A stretch of DNA of 64,000 bases, from the sequence record NC_019401.1. One strand, 5' to 3'. The position numbers were made by a program, and so were the translations under genes. This document shows, piece by piece, positions 3,725-23,637 of the stretch (position 1 is the first letter of the stretch; each line of letters starts with the position of its first letter). A model generated the notes under the pieces. That model saw only the letters and a list, made by a program, of their open reading frames with translations. It searched no databases and was not told the origin of the DNA.

Positions 3725-3838
3725 GTGGAGTTCGTCTAGCGGCCCAGGACACGAAAAGCGATTCTTGACTAAGAATCTTACGGCATTTATAACTTTCATT
3801 TCACGAACGTAACATGGGTTCGAATCCCATACTCCACT
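3725..3838 (+). tRNA. tRNA-Glu(TTC) interrupted by a 41-nt insertion (3754-3794) at position 28/29
   Basis: GTGGAGT/ACTCCAC acceptor; Glu-type D arm; A26-C-G|insert|TTC-ATTTCAC-GAA-CG; T arm ATGGG-TTCGAAT-CCCAT. Confidence 0.85.
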
Positions 3839-5419: not shown

Positions 5420-5546
5420 GGCGAGTTAGCTCAGTGGTAGAGCACGTATGAAACCCAGGATTCCTGTACTTGAATCCCGCAGCAACTATAACTCTCAAGC
5501 CTTTTAAGCTCGTGGTCGGGGCGTTCGAATCCCCCACTCGCCGCCA
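5420..5546 (+). tRNA. tRNA-Lys(TTT) interrupted by a 51-nt insertion (5447-5497) at position 28/29
   Basis: GGCGAGT/ACTCGCC acceptor; GCTC/GAGC D stem; ACG|insert|AGC-CTTTTAA-GCT-CGT; T-loop; CCA encoded. Confidence 0.85.
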
Positions 5547-9369: not shown

Positions 9370-9612
9370 ATGAAAAGTGCAACGGAACTTAAAAACCTTC
9401 ATAAACGTATCCAGCAATTGAAAAGTCAGCAAAAGTTATTGAATGTTGAATATGCTGAACTGGATGCTAAAGAAAAGAAAACCAAAGATGAAACTAAACA
9501 TCTTGCCGCAGTACGCAATTTGCAGTGGTCTTTGATTTACAAAATTCGTGGTCTTGAATTAACGTTTAAAGACCTAAAAGAGCAAGTTATTCTCGAAATC
9601 ATCAATTCGTAA
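9370..9612 (+). CDS. coiled-coil hypothetical protein
   Basis: ORF track; heptad pattern. Confidence 0.6.
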   Translation: MKSATELKNLHKRIQQLKSQQKLLNVEYAELDAKEKKTKDETKHLAAVRNLQWSLIYKIRGLELTFKDLKEQVILEIINS

Positions 9613-9624
9613 CTGGAGATCATA

Positions 9625-10095
9625 ATGGGTACGATTATTTTGTACGGCGTGTTTATTGCATTGGGTTTATTCATCGTATACATGTTGGTGGTAACATCAG
9701 CAATGGGTACTGAACGCCTTAAAGTACCGCAATTTTTAATGTCTTCTTTGACTTACAGTGAAGAAGCAACTGCAAAGTTGAATCTCCTTCTGGATAAGTA
9801 TGAAGCAGGACTTTTGAAAATCAAACGTACTCAAACTTCATTGCTGTTTACTGACGCAGAAACAGGCTCAAAAGCTGGCGAAATCTGGATTAAGAACAAG
9901 TACTACTCGTATGGTATTCTCCATCGTTATGGTGCAAATGATGATCGACAGTTCGCATGTAATAAACCAAACATCAAAACGTTCAAGCGTATCGTGAAGC
10001 TTGAACAAGCAATCGACAAACACTTTAAAGAGCAGACTGCAAATGCAGCACCTGCAAAACCTGCGAAAGCTGGTGAAGAAGTTGTTCTAGATTAA
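9625..10095 (+). CDS. membrane-anchored hypothetical protein
   Basis: N-terminal TM; GGAG RBS; terminator AAGGGC-GAAA-GCCCTT follows. Confidence 0.75.
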   Translation: MGTIILYGVFIALGLFIVYMLVVTSAMGTERLKVPQFLMSSLTYSEEATAKLNLLLDKYEAGLLKIKRTQTSLLFTDAETGSKAGEIWIKNKYYSYGILHRYGANDDRQFACNKPNIKTFKRIVKLEQAIDKHFKEQTANAAPAKPAKAGEEVVLD

Positions 10096-10602: not shown

Positions 10603-10722
10603 GGAATCTTACAGCAAAAATAATTAATTTTTGATGAAAACAAAACGACGGCGGTTCGAATCCCCACCCACGATTTGCCTTATTTAAAGTGGGAGCATGG
10701 TGCTGGATAAACAAGAGATTCC
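10603..10722 (+). ncRNA. ACAGCAA element, permuted tRNA-like form
   Basis: GGAATCT/AGATTCC outer helix, ACAGCAA, T-loop GGTTCGAATCC, CCCAC/GTGGG acceptor-like helix. Confidence 0.75.
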
Positions 10723-11300: not shown

Positions 11301-11418
11301 GAAATCTTACAGCAAACAATATCTTATATTTTTTATGCGAAAAAAACGATGTGGTTCGAATCCACAACAACCATGTTGCTATGTTGGTTGTGCATGGGGC
11401 TAGAAAACAACAGATTTC
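11301..11418 (+). ncRNA. ACAGCAA element, permuted tRNA-like form
   Basis: GAAATCT/AGATTTC helix; ACAGCAA; TGTGG-TTCGAAT-CCACA; ACAACCA/TGGTTGT. Confidence 0.75.
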
Positions 11419-11604: not shown

Positions 11605-11676
11605 GTTCCCATCGTCTAGCGGCTAGGACGCTTCCCTTTCAAGGAGGAAACCGGAGTTCGATTCTCCGTGGGAACG
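11605..11676 (+). tRNA. tRNA-Glu(TTC), uninterrupted
   Basis: GTTCCCA/TGGGAAC; CTTCC-CTTTCAA-GGAGG. Confidence 0.92.
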
Positions 11677-11688
11677 CAAAGTAGTTTT

Positions 11689-11771: not shown

Positions 11772-11878
11772 AAGAATCGCACAGCAAACATAAATCTTAT
11801 ATATTTCATTTGGCGAAAAACACCTTCGGTTCAATTCCGATTTACCACTGGTTGTGGGGATAGAAAAACACGATTCTT
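11772..11878 (+). ncRNA. ACAGCAA element with Gln-like anticodon arm and T arm (permuted)
   Basis: AAGAATCG/CGATTCTT; TTTC-ATTTGGC-GAAA; TCGG-TTCAATT-CCGA. Confidence 0.7.
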
Positions 11879-11905: not shown

Positions 11906-11985
11906 GAAGTGGGATTTAAACAGCAAACTAACCCTTTACTGAAAATCATATAGTAGATGGATTACTCGGAATTTCGATTCCCTTC
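11906..11985 (+). ncRNA. ACAGCAA element, degenerate
   Basis: GAAG(T)GGGA/TCCCTTC helix; ACAGCAA at 11920. Confidence 0.5.
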
Positions 11986-12106
11986 TTAATCATTACTCGC
12001 ACAGTATTAAAACAGTGTATTGTTTAAGTTCGTCAACTTATTCAATTATCCTTTTATTAAATCCCGTATAATAAAGTACTTAAATCCTATTGGACAGTAC
12101 TTTTAT

Positions 12107-12207: not shown

Positions 12208-12330
12208 GGGAAAGTAGCTCAGTTGGTAGAGCAGGTAAGAAAACCCAAATTACTGTATTGTAATTTCACAGCAACCATACTTCATCCACTTTTAATGGCC
12301 TGGTCGTTGGTTCAAATCCAACCTTTCCCA
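12208..12330 (+). tRNA. tRNA-Lys(TTT) interrupted by a 50-nt insertion (12236-12285) at position 28/29
   Basis: GGGAAAG/CTTTCCC; GCTC/GAGC; AGG|insert|CCA-CTTTTAA-TGG-CCT; GTTGG-TTCAAAT-CCAAC. Confidence 0.85.
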
Positions 12331-12333
12331 CAC

Positions 12334-12395
12334 AGAATCTAACAGCAAACCTTATTTTATCAAACTTTTACTTTGAAACCAAAATAATAGATTCT
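12334..12395 (+). ncRNA. minimal ACAGCAA element displaying a Lys(UUU) anticodon stem-loop
   Basis: AGAATCTA/TAGATTCT; CAAA-CTTTTAC-TTTG. Confidence 0.7.
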
Positions 12396-13076: not shown

Positions 13077-13122
13077 AAGAATCCATACAGCATTACTTTG
13101 GTCAATAATATATTGGATTCTT
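13077..13122 (+). ncRNA. minimal ACAGCA element (possible Gln-UUG loop)
   Basis: AAGAATCC/GGATTCTT; ACAGCA; CTTTGGT loop. Confidence 0.55.
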
Positions 13123-14053: not shown

Positions 14054-14192
14054 AAGAATCTAACAGCAATTCAATTGTTAACTAAAAATAGCTGCCTCGC
14101 GGCATGTAGGTTCGAATCCTACGAACTATGTCAGTACTGAATAGTGATGGTGAAACAGGTAGACACGGCTATCAACACAAACATAGATTCTT
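14054..14192 (+). ncRNA. ACAGCAA element enclosing a circularly permuted tRNA-Leu-like sequence
   Basis: 3' half (ATAGC, variable arm, GTAGG-TTCGAAT-CCTAC) precedes 5' half (ATAGTGA-TG-GTG-AAACAGGTAGA-CAC-G-GCTAT). Confidence 0.8.
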
Positions 14193-14310
14193 GTATTAAT
14201 TAAATCTACAAGAGCATACGTATATTGATTCAATAAGCTATAGACTTTATACGATGGGTAGCAGATGGCTTATCATCTGTCGGTAGTTACGCTGCGGCTA
14301 CCAACAAATT

Positions 14311-14414
14311 TGGAATTCAACAGCAATTCATACTATCCCGCCGCATGTCGCAGTTTCGAGTCCTGCCTTCACTTCGGTATGGTAGATCAGCGGCCTAAAA
14401 AGAAATAAATTCCA
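14311..14414 (+). ncRNA. ACAGCAA element enclosing a degenerate permuted tRNA
   Basis: TGGAATT/AATTCCA; GCGGC/GCCGC anticodon stem; TTCG-capped acceptor remnant; paralogue of 15460-15580. Confidence 0.7.
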
Positions 14415-14428
14415 GTATTAATTAAAAA

Positions 14429-15452: not shown

Positions 15453-15459
15453 AAGAATT

Positions 15460-15580
15460 TGGAATTCAACAGCAAATCAATTCTATCCACGCAACATGTC
15501 GCAGGTTCAAGTCCTGCCAGTACTTTCGAGTACTGTAGCTCAGTTGGTAGAGCAGTCGCCTATAAAAGAAATGAATTCCA
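15460..15580 (+). ncRNA. ACAGCAA element enclosing a near-perfect circularly permuted tRNA
   Basis: GCAGG-TTCAAGT-CCTGC, CAGTACT-TTCG-AGTACTG, TA-GCTC-AGTTGGTA-GAGC; TGGAATTCA/TGAATTCCA outer helix. Confidence 0.85.
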
Positions 15581-15871
15581 GTTTTAATTTATATTGGAGA
15601 AAAATATGTCAAAAATTATTAAGTCTATTAAAAGTGATTTGGAAAAGATGGTATCTTTAGGATTAGCATCAACTGAAACGGTTAATAAAGTTATTCCAAT
15701 TTCTAATGTTTCTTCGAAGAAGAATTCTAAAAAGAAATAAATTCAAGTTTTAATCAAATTCACCAGTCGTACTATGGTTTGACACGGATAGCATGTTATC
15801 CTATTAAGGTCAGAATAGAATACGTATTAGTTCCTTGGTCGGAACTTATGTAAACTCAATTTGTACTAATT

Positions 15872-15925
15872 TAGAATCTAACAGCAATTAAAACTTCTCG
15901 GATATAGAAAAAACAATAGATTCTA
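15872..15925 (+). ncRNA. minimal ACAGCAA element
   Basis: TAGAATCTA/TAGATTCTA; TTCT-CGGATAT-AGAA hairpin. Confidence 0.7.
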
Positions 15926-15951
15926 GCTTTGATTAAACTAAAAGGTTTGAT

Positions 15952-16198: not shown

Positions 16199-16262
16199 GG
16201 AATCTAACAGCAACCATATATTGAACTCAACTGTTAATTGAAAACCTCAAAAAATGGATTCC
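16199..16262 (+). ncRNA. minimal ACAGCAA element displaying an Asn(GUU) anticodon stem-loop
   Basis: GGAATCTA/TGGATTCC; TCAA-CTGTTAA-TTGA. Confidence 0.75.
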
Positions 16263-16401: not shown

Positions 16402-16465
16402 AAGAATCTTGCAGCAAACATATTAAACATATTTTTTGGGTAAATAAACGTTAAAACGGATTCTT
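16402..16465 (+). ncRNA. minimal GCAGCAA element displaying a Pro(UGG) anticodon stem-loop
   Basis: AAGAATCT/GGATTCTT; ATTT-TTTGGGT-AAAT. Confidence 0.7.
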
Positions 16466-16546: not shown

Positions 16547-16682
16547 CTAAATCACTTCCTTTGTGATTTAAGCTGGTATGATTCCCCTAGCTTGTAAAAT
16601 TATATAACGGGAACCGCGTTGCACCTGAATGGGTCGGGTCGTAAAGATCAAGTACATTCAATACTGAGAGCGGCAGTACACT

Positions 16683-16754
16683 GCATCCATCGTATATCGG
16701 CTATTATAATTGGCTTCCACCCAATAGAACGGAGTTCGACCCTCCGTGGATGCT
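16683..16754 (+). tRNA. tRNA-Gly(TCC)
   Basis: GCATCCA/TGGATGC; ATTGG-CTTCCAC-CCAAT; U73. Confidence 0.93.
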
Positions 16755-16874
16755 CAAAATTTAACAAAACAATATAAGGTAAATTATATGCTATAGAATC
16801 CTAGTACTGGTCCTCCTGATAAGTTTAATTCAGAACAAACTACTAAATTAAACAATATCAAAAAGGAACATATT

Positions 16875-17201: not shown

Positions 17202-17208
17202 CAGAATT

Positions 17209-17264
17209 TAGAATCTAACAGCAATTAAAACTCATTTGGATAATATGAAAAACAATAGATTCTA
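17209..17264 (+). ncRNA. minimal ACAGCAA element (near-copy of 15872-15925)
   Basis: TAGAATCTAACAGCAATTAAAACT...GAAAAACAATAGATTCTAG. Confidence 0.7.
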
Positions 17265-17289
17265 GTACTTTTTTAGCTAAGAGACAAAT

Positions 17290-23546: not shown

Positions 23547-23619
23547 ACCTCGTTAACTCAGTTGGTAGAGTAACGGTCTTTTAAACCGTGAGTCGCTGGT
23601 TCGAACCCAGCACGAGGTA
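23547..23619 (+). tRNA. tRNA-Lys(TTT), uninterrupted
   Basis: ACCTCGT/ACGAGGT; ACGGT-CTTTTAA-ACCGT. Confidence 0.93.
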
Positions 23620-23637
23620 CTAATATTAAGGAATATA

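What the first reader, a model, noticed from the sequence alone, without database searches (positions are those of the whole stretch)
3725..3838. tRNA-Glu(UUC) with a 41-nt insertion in the anticodon stem
SEEN: removing 3754-3794 (AAAAGC-GATTCTT-GACT-AAGAATC-TTACGGCATTTATAACT) restores a complete cloverleaf with stem CGTTC/GAACG. This is the shortest and most divergent insert (ACGGCAT), so it helps define the minimal element. An intact tRNA-Glu(UUC) also exists at 11605. INFERENCE: the interrupted copy may be conditionally activated by splicing.
Basis: partly seen in the sequence, partly recalled or inferred. Interest (0 to 1): 0.82.

Follow-up and report, generated by a model that had tools for sequence, protein, structure and literature searches.

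The report
tRNA gene carrying Y-RNA-like arm
The 41-base "insert" in this phage tRNA-Glu gene is real, but it is one copy of a conserved RNA module that also occurs in at least 13 non-tRNA small RNAs nearby and sits beside Ro-like protein genes in unrelated phages, so the gene looks more like a tRNA/Y-RNA hybrid than a tRNA waiting to be spliced.

Summary
The window is the tRNA region of Cronobacter jumbo phage GAP32. Window 3725-3838 is a tRNA-Glu(UUC)-shaped gene, and deleting exactly 3754-3794 restores a canonical cloverleaf.

The insert has three parts: an A-rich strand, a covarying hairpin (P2), and a C-N-G-C-A strand. Two tRNA-Lys genes in the window (5420-5546, 12208-12331) carry the same kind of insert at the same position, 28/29. 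Every relative examined keeps the insert, and there it is better conserved than the anticodon loop.

The same module also occurs in an "open", circularly permuted form in 13 intergenic RNAs at 10.6-17.3 kb. Seven of these contain a T-arm. One (15459-15581) is a complete permuted cloverleaf that gives a sub-threshold YrlA (Y RNA-like) match.

Helix+ACAGCAA elements lie in tandem within about 1 kb of the DUF2828/vWA "Ro-like RNA-binding protein" gene, or in the adjoining tRNA array, in 7 of 8 unrelated phage lineages tested. GAP32 has this gene (gp176) directly after an RNA ligase gene.

Best reading: the gene encodes a tRNA/Y-RNA chimera whose arm binds the Ro-like protein. Splicing is not excluded and no mechanism for it was found. 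I found no Rfam family and no paper describing the module.

The parts
3725..3838 (+). tRNA-Glu-shaped gene carrying the module (family A). Not annotated in the GAP32 record.
   Evidence: Orthologues with the insert are in CBB, XbC2, Kaldavass, fHe-Yen9-03/04, BF, the pEa_SNUABM phages and IMG/VR contigs.
3725..3753 (+). 5' tRNA part: acceptor 5' strand, D-arm (U11-A24, U13-G22, as in E. coli tRNA-Glu), A26, C27, G28.
   Evidence: read. Acceptor pairs covary.
3754..3759 (+). A-rich strand of the module (AAAAGC).
3760..3777 (+). P2 hairpin: GATTCTT / GACT / AAGAATC.
   Evidence: Covariation. P2 forms in the minimum-free-energy fold.
3778..3794 (+). 3' strand of the module, with the C-N-G-C-A core (CGGCA at 3781-3785).
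3795..3838 (+). 3' tRNA part: 29-31 TTC, loop ATTTCAC (anticodon TTC at 3800-3802), GAA-CG, 4-nt variable loop, T-arm, acceptor 3' strand, discriminator T.
5420..5546 (+). tRNA-Lys(UUU)-shaped gene with a 51-nt module at 28/29 (module 5447-5497); family B.
12208..12331 (+). tRNA-Lys(UUU)-shaped gene with a 50-nt module at 28/29 (module 12236-12285); family C.
15459..15581 (+). Open-module RNA enclosing a complete, circularly permuted cloverleaf whose acceptor stem is closed by UUCG (YrlA-like).
10603..10722 (+). Open-module RNA with a T-arm.
11301..11418 (+). Open-module RNA with a T-arm.
11772..11878 (+). Open-module RNA with a T-arm, directly after tRNA-Tyr.
11910..12066 (+). Long open-module RNA (GGGATTTAA ... 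TTAAATCCC).
12334..12395 (+). Short open-module RNA.
13077..13122 (+). Short open-module RNA (CAGCAT variant).
14054..14192 (+). Open-module RNA with a T-arm.
14310..14415 (+). Open-module RNA with a T-arm-like hairpin.
15871..15926 (+). Short open-module RNA.
16199..16262 (+). Short open-module RNA with an anticodon-loop-like hairpin (TCAA CTGTTAA TTGA).
16402..16465 (+). Short open-module RNA.
17208..17265 (+). Short open-module RNA, paralogue of 15871-15926.
11605..11677 (+). Uninterrupted tRNA-Glu(UUC), so the interrupted copy is not needed for decoding.
23547..23620 (+). Uninterrupted tRNA-Lys(UUU).

Best explanation
The 41 bases are not an ordinary intron. They are the hairpin-capped ("closed") form of a conserved RNA module made of an A-rich strand, helix P2, and a 3' strand with the core C-N-G-C-A(A). 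The same module, with P2 formed by the two ends of the RNA, closes a family of Y-RNA-like small RNAs of this phage, several of which contain tRNA-like domains. I therefore read 3725-3838 as a tRNA/Y-RNA chimera: a tRNA-Glu-shaped body with an extra protein-binding arm leaving the anticodon stem between positions 28 and 29.

The arm most likely binds the phage's Ro-like DUF2828/vWA protein (GAP32_176, outside the window). The tRNA-shaped body and anticodon hairpin would then engage tRNA-handling proteins, by analogy with bacterial Y RNAs that tether Ro60. Because gp176 directly follows an RNA ligase gene, the likely setting is tRNA repair or quality control during infection, or protection from or decoying of host tRNA-cutting defences.

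Shown: the module, its hairpin covariation, its position, its conservation, its occurrence outside tRNAs, and its genomic association with DUF2828 genes. Inferred: binding by gp176, that the RNA is stable without splicing, and the biological role.
For: 1. Three tRNA-shaped genes in the window carry the module at the same tRNA position. About 30 more do in Mimasvirus, Eneladusvirus, KVP40-like vibriophages, phage S13 and uncultured jumbo contigs.
2. P2 covaries: 8 of 8 pairs changed on both sides, 0 of 500 shuffles reached the observed value, and slid controls are far lower.
3. In family A the module is nearly invariant. The acceptor and T stems change with compensation, and the anticodon loop drifts: UUC, UCA, 8-nt loops. 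Family E (D479 c15759, KVP40 c4701) has the module in place of the anticodon loop.
4. Open, permuted copies: the strict scan finds 16 hits on the + strand and 1 on the - strand, against 2.15 in shuffles. Thirteen are in intergenic spaces at 10.6-17.3 kb and seven hold a T-arm.
5. 15459-15581 is a whole permuted cloverleaf with a closed acceptor stem. It matches Rfam YrlA at 44.7 bits, below the gathering score of 69. Its BF orthologue has compensatory changes at 28:42 and 30:40.
6. A sequence-only model built from open copies in other phages, with no GAP32 and no tRNA-embedded sequence, gives 14 top hits in the window. All are on the + strand: 12 open copies plus the inserts of the two tRNA-Lys genes, at ranks 12 and 14.
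7. Helix+ACAGCAA elements lie in tandem within about 1 kb of the DUF2828 gene, or in the adjoining tRNA array, in S13, mycobacteriophage Finnry, Listeria LP-124, Felix-O1-like momo, Staphylococcus S-CoN_Ph11, Campylobacter F358 and Bacillus Chewbecca. The background in 30 unrelated viral loci is 0.27 hits per 10 kb.
8. In S13, two closed-module tRNAs follow the DUF2828 gene within 0.5-0.75 kb on the same strand.
9. GAP32 encodes the protein (DUF2828 + DUF7788/vWA) directly after an RNA ligase gene. CBB, BF and KVP40-like phages have it too.
10. Chen et al. 2014 (PMC4201824) place the Ro60-binding motif GNCGAA near the 5' end of YrlA RNAs. CNGCAA sits at the corresponding place here.
Against: No direct evidence of RNA-protein binding, or even of expression. 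In GAP32, CBB and BF the DUF2828 gene is about 190 kb from these RNAs. One of the eight DUF2828 loci tested (Pseudomonas phage Astolliot) showed no module within +/-3 kb. The hairpin model R1 found nothing in the Felix-O1-like phage; the copies there were found by eye and by the pattern scan. This particular insert has CGGCAU instead of CAGCAA and is not found by the independent model R2. Its membership rests on architecture, on R1 (for which it was a seed), and on bridging relatives such as D479 c15895. That DUF2828 is Ro-like comes from record annotations and from Iyer et al. 2021 (PMC7824862). Pfam gives only DUF2828/DUF7788 and a weak vWA match, and a sequence search of PDB gives nothing. 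In most members precise removal of the module gives a canonical anticodon arm, which a never-spliced RNA would not obviously need. An arm at 28/29 would probably prevent use on the ribosome (my inference from ribosome-tRNA contacts).
Confidence: 0.55

Rival explanations
1. It is a true protein-dependent tRNA intron. The module is the recognition signal for an unidentified endonuclease. The nick left in the anticodon stem at 28/29 is sealed by a phage RNA ligase (for example GAP32_175, whose gene is next to the Ro-like protein gene), giving a functional spare tRNA-Glu. The open copies would then be processing stems for other small RNAs, as bulge-helix-bulge motifs serve both tRNA introns and rRNA processing stems in archaea.
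For: Precise removal gives a 5-bp stem and a 7-nt loop with U33 and a purine at 37 in most members. The resulting anticodons are Lys UUU, Glu UUC, Gln UUG, Asn GUU, Asp GUC, Ile GAU and Tyr GUA. The tRNA-Glu identity features U11-A24, U13-G22 and a 4-nt variable loop are kept (identity rules from my own knowledge). The insert position varies (27/28, 28/29, 29/30, 31/32), as expected if the module itself is what gets recognised. An RNA ligase gene lies next to the DUF2828 gene in GAP32, and an RtcB gene lies 1.3 kb from it in Listeria phage LP-124. A nick inside a duplex is the preferred substrate of Rnl2-type ligases (my own knowledge).
Against: No endonuclease candidate and no bulge-helix-bulge geometry (inspection). 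No ribozyme or intron family matches. Thirteen copies in the window have no exons to join. Family E has no anticodon loop left. Orthologues carry 8-nt or 10-nt loops, or UCA. Uninterrupted Glu-UUC and Lys-UUU genes exist in the same genome.
Confidence: 0.25
2. The module is a general RNA-processing or stability element, for example a nuclease entry site or a protective cap for a polycistronic tRNA/small-RNA precursor. It would be unrelated to the DUF2828 protein, and the interrupted tRNAs would be by-products.
For: All copies lie on the transcribed strand inside the tRNA array, often abutting tRNA ends, for example 11772 directly after tRNA-Tyr.
Against: This does not explain the tandem copies next to DUF2828 genes in phages of Gram-positive, Gram-negative and actinobacterial hosts. 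It also does not explain the precise placement inside anticodon stems.
Confidence: 0.1
3. It is a decayed tRNA pseudogene interrupted by a small selfish DNA repeat (a MITE-like element with terminal inverted repeats), with no RNA-level function.
For: The open copies look like short elements with 7-10-bp terminal inverted repeats, and some are near-identical paralogues (15871 and 17208). Annotators have called the orthologues pseudo-tRNA or tRNA-OTHER.
Against: Strand bias is 16:1. There are no target-site duplications. The helix sequence covaries while the asymmetric flanks (ACAGCAA on one side, A-rich on the other) stay fixed across phyla. The insert is kept at orthologous loci, with no empty sites in 20 related genomes. 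The module is more conserved than the surrounding tRNA.
Confidence: 0.05
4. The insert carries a sigma-70 promoter (TTGACT-N17-TATAAC at 3765-3793) that drives the downstream gene GAP32_417.
For: 5/6 + 5/6 matches at the ideal spacing, read.
Against: It is not conserved in orthologues (CACAAC in Yen9-04; no -35 hexamer in XbC2) or in families B and C. Promoter-like sites in the region are at chance level: 34 found against 34.7 expected.
Confidence: 0.03

Closest known systems
Bacterial Y RNAs of the YrlA type (Rfam RF02553) with their Ro60/Rsr partner
   Same: A tRNA-like domain is joined, where the anticodon stem would be, to a helix with a short conserved motif next to its 5' strand. Several RNAs occur per locus, both long tRNA-like and short (compare YrlA and YrlB). 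They are encoded beside a Ro-like TROVE/vWA-type protein gene on the same strand, with RNA ligase genes nearby. YrlA-like RNAs were already reported next to Ro genes in 22 phages (PMC4201824).
   Different: The motif is CNGCAA, not GNCGAA. The protein is DUF2828/DUF7788, not Pfam TROVE. In the finding itself the helix is capped by a loop and inserted into a real, open-ended tRNA cloverleaf that keeps an anticodon hairpin. The copy number is very high (16 in this window). In GAP32 the protein gene is about 190 kb away.
Archaeal and eukaryotic tRNA introns (bulge-helix-bulge, EndA/TSEN plus ligase), including non-canonical positions and permuted tRNA genes
   Same: A short intervening sequence in the anticodon arm, sometimes at positions other than 37/38. 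Precise removal restores the cloverleaf. The same motif occurs in closed form (inside tRNA) and open form (processing stem, permuted gene).
   Different: There are no two 3-nt bulges around a 4-bp helix. No splicing endonuclease is known in these phages or their hosts. The junctions lie 5-12 nt and 17-22 nt from the helix.
Group I introns in bacterial and phage tRNA genes
   Same: They interrupt tRNA genes of bacteria.
   Different: Those are more than 200 nt long, have a P1-P9 catalytic core, and sit in the anticodon loop. This insert is 41-53 nt with one hairpin and sits in the stem. There is no Rfam hit.
Engineered tRNA scaffolds, and tmRNA-like or other tRNA-like chimeras
   Same: A tRNA body is used as a stable, correctly processed carrier for another RNA element placed in the anticodon arm.
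   Different: This one is natural, keeps the anticodon hairpin beside the insert, and belongs to a protein-linked family.

Membership tests
tRNA (RF00005 / ARAGORN cloverleaf) | Continuous cloverleaf with a 5-bp anticodon stem and a 7-nt loop | tested here: not met
   As encoded it is not found by default ARAGORN or by the Rfam tRNA model, even at E<=10. It is met only after deleting 3754-3794.
tRNA (RF00005 / ARAGORN cloverleaf) | Acceptor stem, D-arm and T-arm with the conserved T-loop | tested here: met
   (acceptor and T stems covary among orthologues)
Bulge-helix-bulge tRNA intron | Two 3-nt bulges on opposite strands separated by a 4-bp helix, with the splice sites in the bulges | tested here: not met
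   Inspection of the junctions. The first intron bases cannot form a 4-bp helix with the first bases of the 3' exon.
Bulge-helix-bulge tRNA intron | A splicing endonuclease (EndA family) encoded by the phage or host | not tested
   The whole genome was not searched. Nothing of the kind is annotated in the parts read.
Group I intron | Catalytic core P3-P9, length above about 200 nt, match to the Rfam Intron_gpI model | tested here: not met
   41 nt with a single hairpin. No match.
Small self-cleaving ribozymes (hammerhead, twister, pistol, hatchet, hairpin, HDV-like) | Match to the family covariance model | tested here: not met
   (E up to 10)
YrlA / Y RNA | Rfam RF02553 score at or above the gathering score of 69 | tested here: not met
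   The finding itself gives no hit. The related RNA at 15473-15581 scores 44.7 bits. Finnry scores 39.5 bits.
YrlA / Y RNA | tRNA-like domain (T- and D-arms) joined to a stem at the anticodon-stem position | tested here: met
   In the finding the tRNA domain is a full, open-ended cloverleaf.
YrlA / Y RNA | GNCGAAN0-1G Ro-binding motif near the 5' end (PMC4201824) | tested here: not met
   The motif here is C-N-G-C-A-A (CGGCAU in the finding), at the corresponding place.
YrlA / Y RNA | Encoded within about 4 kb of the Ro-type protein gene on the same strand | tested here: inconclusive
   Not met in GAP32 (about 190 kb away). Met for related RNAs in S13, Finnry, LP-124, momo, S-CoN_Ph11, F358 and Chewbecca.
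YrlA / Y RNA | Bound by the Ro-type protein | not testable with these tools
   Needs immunoprecipitation or a gel-shift assay.
MITE-like DNA repeat | Terminal inverted repeats with target-site duplication, both orientations, presence/absence polymorphism | tested here: not met
   Strand bias 16:1. No empty sites in relatives. No duplications seen.

The most novel reading that the evidence does not exclude
Phages of many lineages carry a ribonucleoprotein system in which a Ro-like DUF2828 protein recognises a helix+CNGCAA module. When that module sits inside the anticodon stem of a tRNA gene, it is excised and the stem nick is sealed by the linked phage RNA ligase. This would be the first protein-dependent tRNA splicing (or programmed cut-and-repair) pathway in bacterial viruses. 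It would give the phage a protected reserve of exactly those tRNAs (Lys, Glu, Gln, Asn, Asp, Tyr, Ile) that host anticodon nucleases attack.
Probability: 0.15. Interest if true: 0.92.

Novelty: new variant of a known kind. Interest (0 to 1): 0.78.

Why it matters
If the reading holds, three things follow. First, dozens of "pseudo", "undetermined" or mis-typed long tRNAs in jumbo and T4-like phage genomes are a coherent class of tRNA/Y-RNA hybrids. Second, a widespread phage protein of unknown function (DUF2828, found in 711 of about 50,000 phage records) gains a candidate RNA ligand with a simple, testable motif. Third, it links phage tRNA arrays, Ro-like proteins and RNA ligases into one system. 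That bears on the open question of how phages protect translation from tRNA-cutting defences. It also gives annotators a concrete signature: a helix, 1-3 nt, then CAGCAA, with an A-rich strand opposite.

Tried and rejected
- **Bulge-helix-bulge, group I and small ribozyme readings.** Nothing fits the geometry, and Rfam is silent.
- **Promoter inside the insert.** Not conserved, and promoter-like sites are at chance level.
- **Pairing of the two ends of the insert (P1).** It is strong in D479 c16043 but not consistent across families (inspection), so I left it out of the model.
- **Alternative pairing TTACG/CGTAA** proposed by RNAalifold and RNAfold. The pairs are nearly invariant, break in the divergent members, and show no covariation.
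- **The "RNA ligase" near the D479 interrupted tRNAs.** It is Acb1, an anti-CBASS phosphodiesterase, and is irrelevant.
- **The hairpin model R1 on the Felix-O1-like phage.** It found nothing. The open copies there needed a different search.
- **A loose open-module scan.** It was as noisy as the shuffles, about 54 hits, and I replaced it with a stricter one.
- **Literature searches** for phage tRNA introns, GAP32, KVP40 or Eneladusvirus tRNAs, and DUF2828. None described the element.
- **Sequence search of PDB with gp176.** No hit.

Full report
**What the window is.** The window is identical to Cronobacter phage vB_CsaM_GAP32 (358,663 bp, genus Mimasvirus). Window base 1 is record base 294,664. 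It covers the phage's tRNA region. Default ARAGORN finds 18 tRNAs.

**The observation.** Window 3725-3838 reads as acceptor stem, D-arm, A26, C27, G28, then 41 bases, then TTC-ATTTCAC-GAA-CG, a 4-nt variable loop, T-arm and acceptor 3' strand. Default ARAGORN and the Rfam tRNA model do not see it. I tried every single deletion (start 22-47, length 25-65). Among the products that ARAGORN accepts with a fully paired anticodon stem, only the deletion of 3754-3794 both removes the module and uses the downstream hairpin as the anticodon arm, giving tRNA-Glu(UUC) with stem CGTTC/GAACG and loop AUUUCAC. The other accepted products re-use module sequence as the anticodon arm. An uninterrupted tRNA-Glu(UUC) lies at 11605-11677.

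**It is one of a family.**
- ARAGORN with introns allowed finds two more interrupted genes, 5420-5546 (annotated tRNA-Lys in GenBank) and 12208-12331.
- Parsed by hand and by the deletion scan, both are tRNA-Lys(UUU) with 51- and 50-nt inserts between positions 28 and 29, the same place as in the tRNA-Glu gene.
- All three inserts share one plan: an A-rich strand, a 6-9-bp hairpin (P2) usually capped by a GNNA-type loop, and a 17-22-nt strand that begins with C-N-G-C-A.
- The finding's insert is the shortest and has CGGCAU where the others have CAGCAA.

**Conservation.**
- blastn finds the interrupted Glu-type gene, with the match running through the insert, in 20 related records: CBB, XbC2, Kaldavass, fHe-Yen9-03/04, BF, six pEa_SNUABM phages and the distant Vibrio phage D479. 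It sits at a syntenic site, and no relative has an empty site.
- A pattern scan of IMG/VR, plus ARAGORN on the loci fetched, brought the set to 37 distinct interrupted tRNA-shaped genes. These include five in D479, six in KVP40 and several in uncultured jumbo contigs.
- Precise removal gives canonical anticodon arms for Lys UUU, Glu UUC, Gln UUG, Asn GUU, Asp GUC, Ile GAU and Tyr GUA in most of them. The insert sits at 27/28, 28/29, 29/30 or 31/32.
- Not all are canonical. Family A orthologues have UUC, UCA, or the 8-nt loops AUUCAUAA/AUUCAUAC. The CBB orthologue of 12208 has a 10-nt loop. In one family (D479 c15759, KVP40 c4701) the module replaces the anticodon loop altogether.
- In the family A alignment the module is almost invariant. 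The acceptor and T stems change with compensation, and the anticodon loop changes freely.
- Selection is therefore acting on the module at least as strongly as on decoding.

**Structure.**
- On a 28-sequence alignment, all eight P2 pairs show changes on both sides (61 cells). None of 500 shuffles reaches the observed values, and sliding the partner by 1-3 columns collapses the signal.
- I found no consistent pairing of the two ends of the insert.
- There is no bulge-helix-bulge geometry and no match to any Rfam family, including ribozymes and introns.
- The single-sequence fold forms the acceptor stem, D-arm, P2 and T-arm. Its z-score of -1.65 is unremarkable.

**The turn: the module is not confined to tRNAs.**
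- A covariance model of the closed module (R1) recovers the three inserts and also gives weaker hits in intergenic DNA.
- Reading those places shows the same parts in circularly permuted order: 5'-[P2 strand]-N1-3-CAGCAA...-[inner RNA]-...A-rich-[complementary P2 strand]-3'.
- A strict scan finds 16 such elements on the + strand and 1 on the - strand, against 2.15 in shuffles. The scan required a helix of at least 7 bp, a 1-3-nt gap, CAGCA[ACT], and a partner strand within 175 nt preceded by at least 4 A in 8.
- Thirteen are convincing, all between 10.6 and 17.3 kb in the gaps between tRNA genes. Seven of the longer ones contain a T-arm.
- The one at 15459-15581 is a complete cloverleaf in permuted order. 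It runs 39-43, variable loop, T-arm, a 7-bp acceptor stem closed by UUCG, D-arm, 27-31, then a 7-nt loop. It matches Rfam YrlA (Y RNA-like) at 44.7 bits, below the curated 69.
- Its orthologue in Serratia phage BF keeps the architecture, with compensatory changes at 28:42 and 30:40.
- As a check that does not depend on GAP32 or on tRNA-embedded copies, I built a sequence-only model from 38 open-form half-modules of other phages. Its 14 best hits in the window are all on the + strand: 12 open copies plus the inserts of the two tRNA-Lys genes, at ranks 12 and 14.
- The tRNA-Glu insert is too divergent for that model. It is tied to the family by its architecture, by R1, and by bridging relatives with Glu-type bodies and a CAGCAA core (D479 c15895, L034, S13).

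**Link to a protein.**
- Near the interrupted tRNAs, D479 encodes an "RNA-binding protein" with Pfam domains DUF2828 and DUF7788 (vWA-like).
- tblastn finds homologues in 711 phage records, including KVP40-like phages, BF and CBB. It also finds them in Felixounavirus, S13, and mycobacteriophages (where the gene is annotated "Ro-like RNA binding protein"). Listeria, Staphylococcus, Campylobacter and Bacillus phages have it as well.
- GAP32 has it as gp176 (record 105,937-107,451), immediately after gp175, an RNA ligase with PF09414 and an OB domain.
- I then looked next to the gene in eight unrelated phages:
  - S13: two closed-module tRNAs and one open tRNA-like RNA within 0.5-0.9 kb downstream.
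  - Finnry: three open modules within 300 nt downstream, one with a partial YrlA match.
  - Listeria LP-124: three within 400 nt upstream, and RtcB 1.3 kb downstream.
  - Felix-O1-like momo: four in the tRNA array that starts 170 nt after the gene, one enclosing a permuted tRNA-like domain.
  - Staphylococcus S-CoN_Ph11: three ACAGCAA sites directly downstream. Campylobacter F358: two upstream. Bacillus Chewbecca: three in the adjoining tRNA array.
  - Pseudomonas phage Astolliot: none.
- The background in 30 unrelated viral loci (292 kb) is 0.27 hits per 10 kb.
- The helix sequence differs by lineage (GGAATC, AGACC, TGGAC, AGACAC ...), while ACAGCAA and its spacing stay fixed.
- Chen et al. 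2014 (PMC4201824) found YrlA RNAs beside Ro60 genes in 254 bacteria and 22 phages, with the presumed Ro-binding motif GNCGAA near the 5' end. CNGCAA occupies the corresponding place here.

**Interpretation.** The best-supported reading is that the 41 bases are the closed form of the protein-binding stem of a phage Y-RNA-like family, and that 3725-3838 encodes a tRNA/Y-RNA chimera. Binding by gp176 is inferred from genomic association only. The role is inferred by analogy with bacterial Ro/Y RNA and from the neighbouring ligase: tethering the Ro-like protein, and perhaps the ligase, to tRNA-handling factors, tRNA repair or surveillance, or decoying tRNA-cutting defences.

The main rival is that the module is a splicing signal and the ligase seals the stem nick. 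That rival is favoured by two facts: removal so often gives a perfect anticodon arm, and the tRNA species involved are those that known anticodon nucleases target (the second point is my own knowledge). It is weakened by four others: the many copies with nothing to splice, the family without an anticodon loop, the drifting loops, and the lack of any endonuclease or known motif. Minor rivals (a general processing element, a MITE, a promoter) are treated in the rivals section.

**Comparison and novelty.** The element works most like a Y RNA, but it fails three of the defining tests for YrlA membership: the Rfam score, the GNCGAA motif, and adjacency in GAP32. It fails the tests for bulge-helix-bulge and group I introns. 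I found no Rfam family and no paper that describes the module, the tRNA inserts or RNA partners of DUF2828. YrlA-like RNAs in Ro-encoding mycobacteriophages were reported in 2014. I therefore rate this a new variant of a known kind rather than categorically new.

**Limits.** Everything rests on sequence. Expression, size of the mature RNA, binding and phenotype are untested. The Ro-like nature of DUF2828 was not tested here. The association test covers eight hand-picked lineages, not a census.

Noticed in passing
window 15459-15581: A complete cloverleaf in circularly permuted order, with its acceptor stem closed by a UUCG loop. It gives a sub-threshold Rfam YrlA hit (44.7 bits against 69) and is not annotated in the GAP32 record. 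The orthologue in Serratia phage BF (L023 ~9535-9656) has compensatory changes.
   Followed up: yes
window 12223-12342 and 16619-16777: The annotated hypothetical CDSs GAP32_431A and GAP32_439A overlap RNA genes on the same strand and are probably spurious. GAP32_431A overlaps the interrupted tRNA-Lys at 12208-12331 and the start of an open-module RNA. GAP32_439A overlaps tRNA-Gly(UCC) at 16683-16755, which the record does not annotate.
   Followed up: partly
record NC_019401 104503-107451 (L060 8504-11452), outside the window: An RNA ligase gene (PF09414 with an N-terminal PHA02142 OB domain) lies directly upstream of the DUF2828/vWA "RNA-binding protein" gene. This pairing is reminiscent of bacterial rsr-rtcB RNA repair operons.
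   Followed up: partly
L058 971-1522 (Listeria phage LP-124): A ROOL-like large RNA (87.4 bits, gathering score 99.1) sits about 1 kb upstream of the DUF2828 gene. It lies among tRNAs and upstream of three open-module RNAs.
   Followed up: no
L003/L043 (Yen9-04), L015, L004 (XbC2), L007 (Kaldavass), L033 (KVP40): Orthologues of the interrupted Glu-type gene carry anticodon UCA, or an 8-nt loop AUUCAUAA that recurs in KVP40. I cannot say whether these act as opal or frameshift suppressors or are simply not decoding.
   Followed up: partly
L027 c2836-2955 (363-kb IMG/VR contig): A tRNA-Trp(CCA)-shaped gene has a 46-nt insert in or just after the 3' part of the anticodon loop (ARAGORN-accepted cuts between 35/36 and 38/39). 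The insert lacks the module, so it may be a different kind of intervening sequence.
   Followed up: no
L008 c16043-16167 (Vibrio phage D479): The acceptor stem of one interrupted tRNA is extended to about 17 bp by leader-trailer pairing (GTCTTATTGCCGGCGGG / CCCGCCGGCAATAAGAC). This may be a processing stem.
   Followed up: no
window 3765-3793: TTGACT-N17-TATAAC, a near-consensus sigma-70 promoter, lies inside the insert. It is not conserved in orthologues.
   Followed up: yes
L056, L061-L064 and others: In every lineage examined, the DUF2828 gene lies beside or inside the phage's tRNA array. That positional link is conserved from mycobacteriophages to Felix-O1-like and Bacillus phages.
   Followed up: partly
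window 9485-9510: Inside CDS GAP32_427 there is a hairpin followed by CCGCA and preceded by AAGAAAACCA, which resembles the 5' strand of the tRNA-Lys insert. It is probably chance: neither model picked it up.
   Followed up: partly
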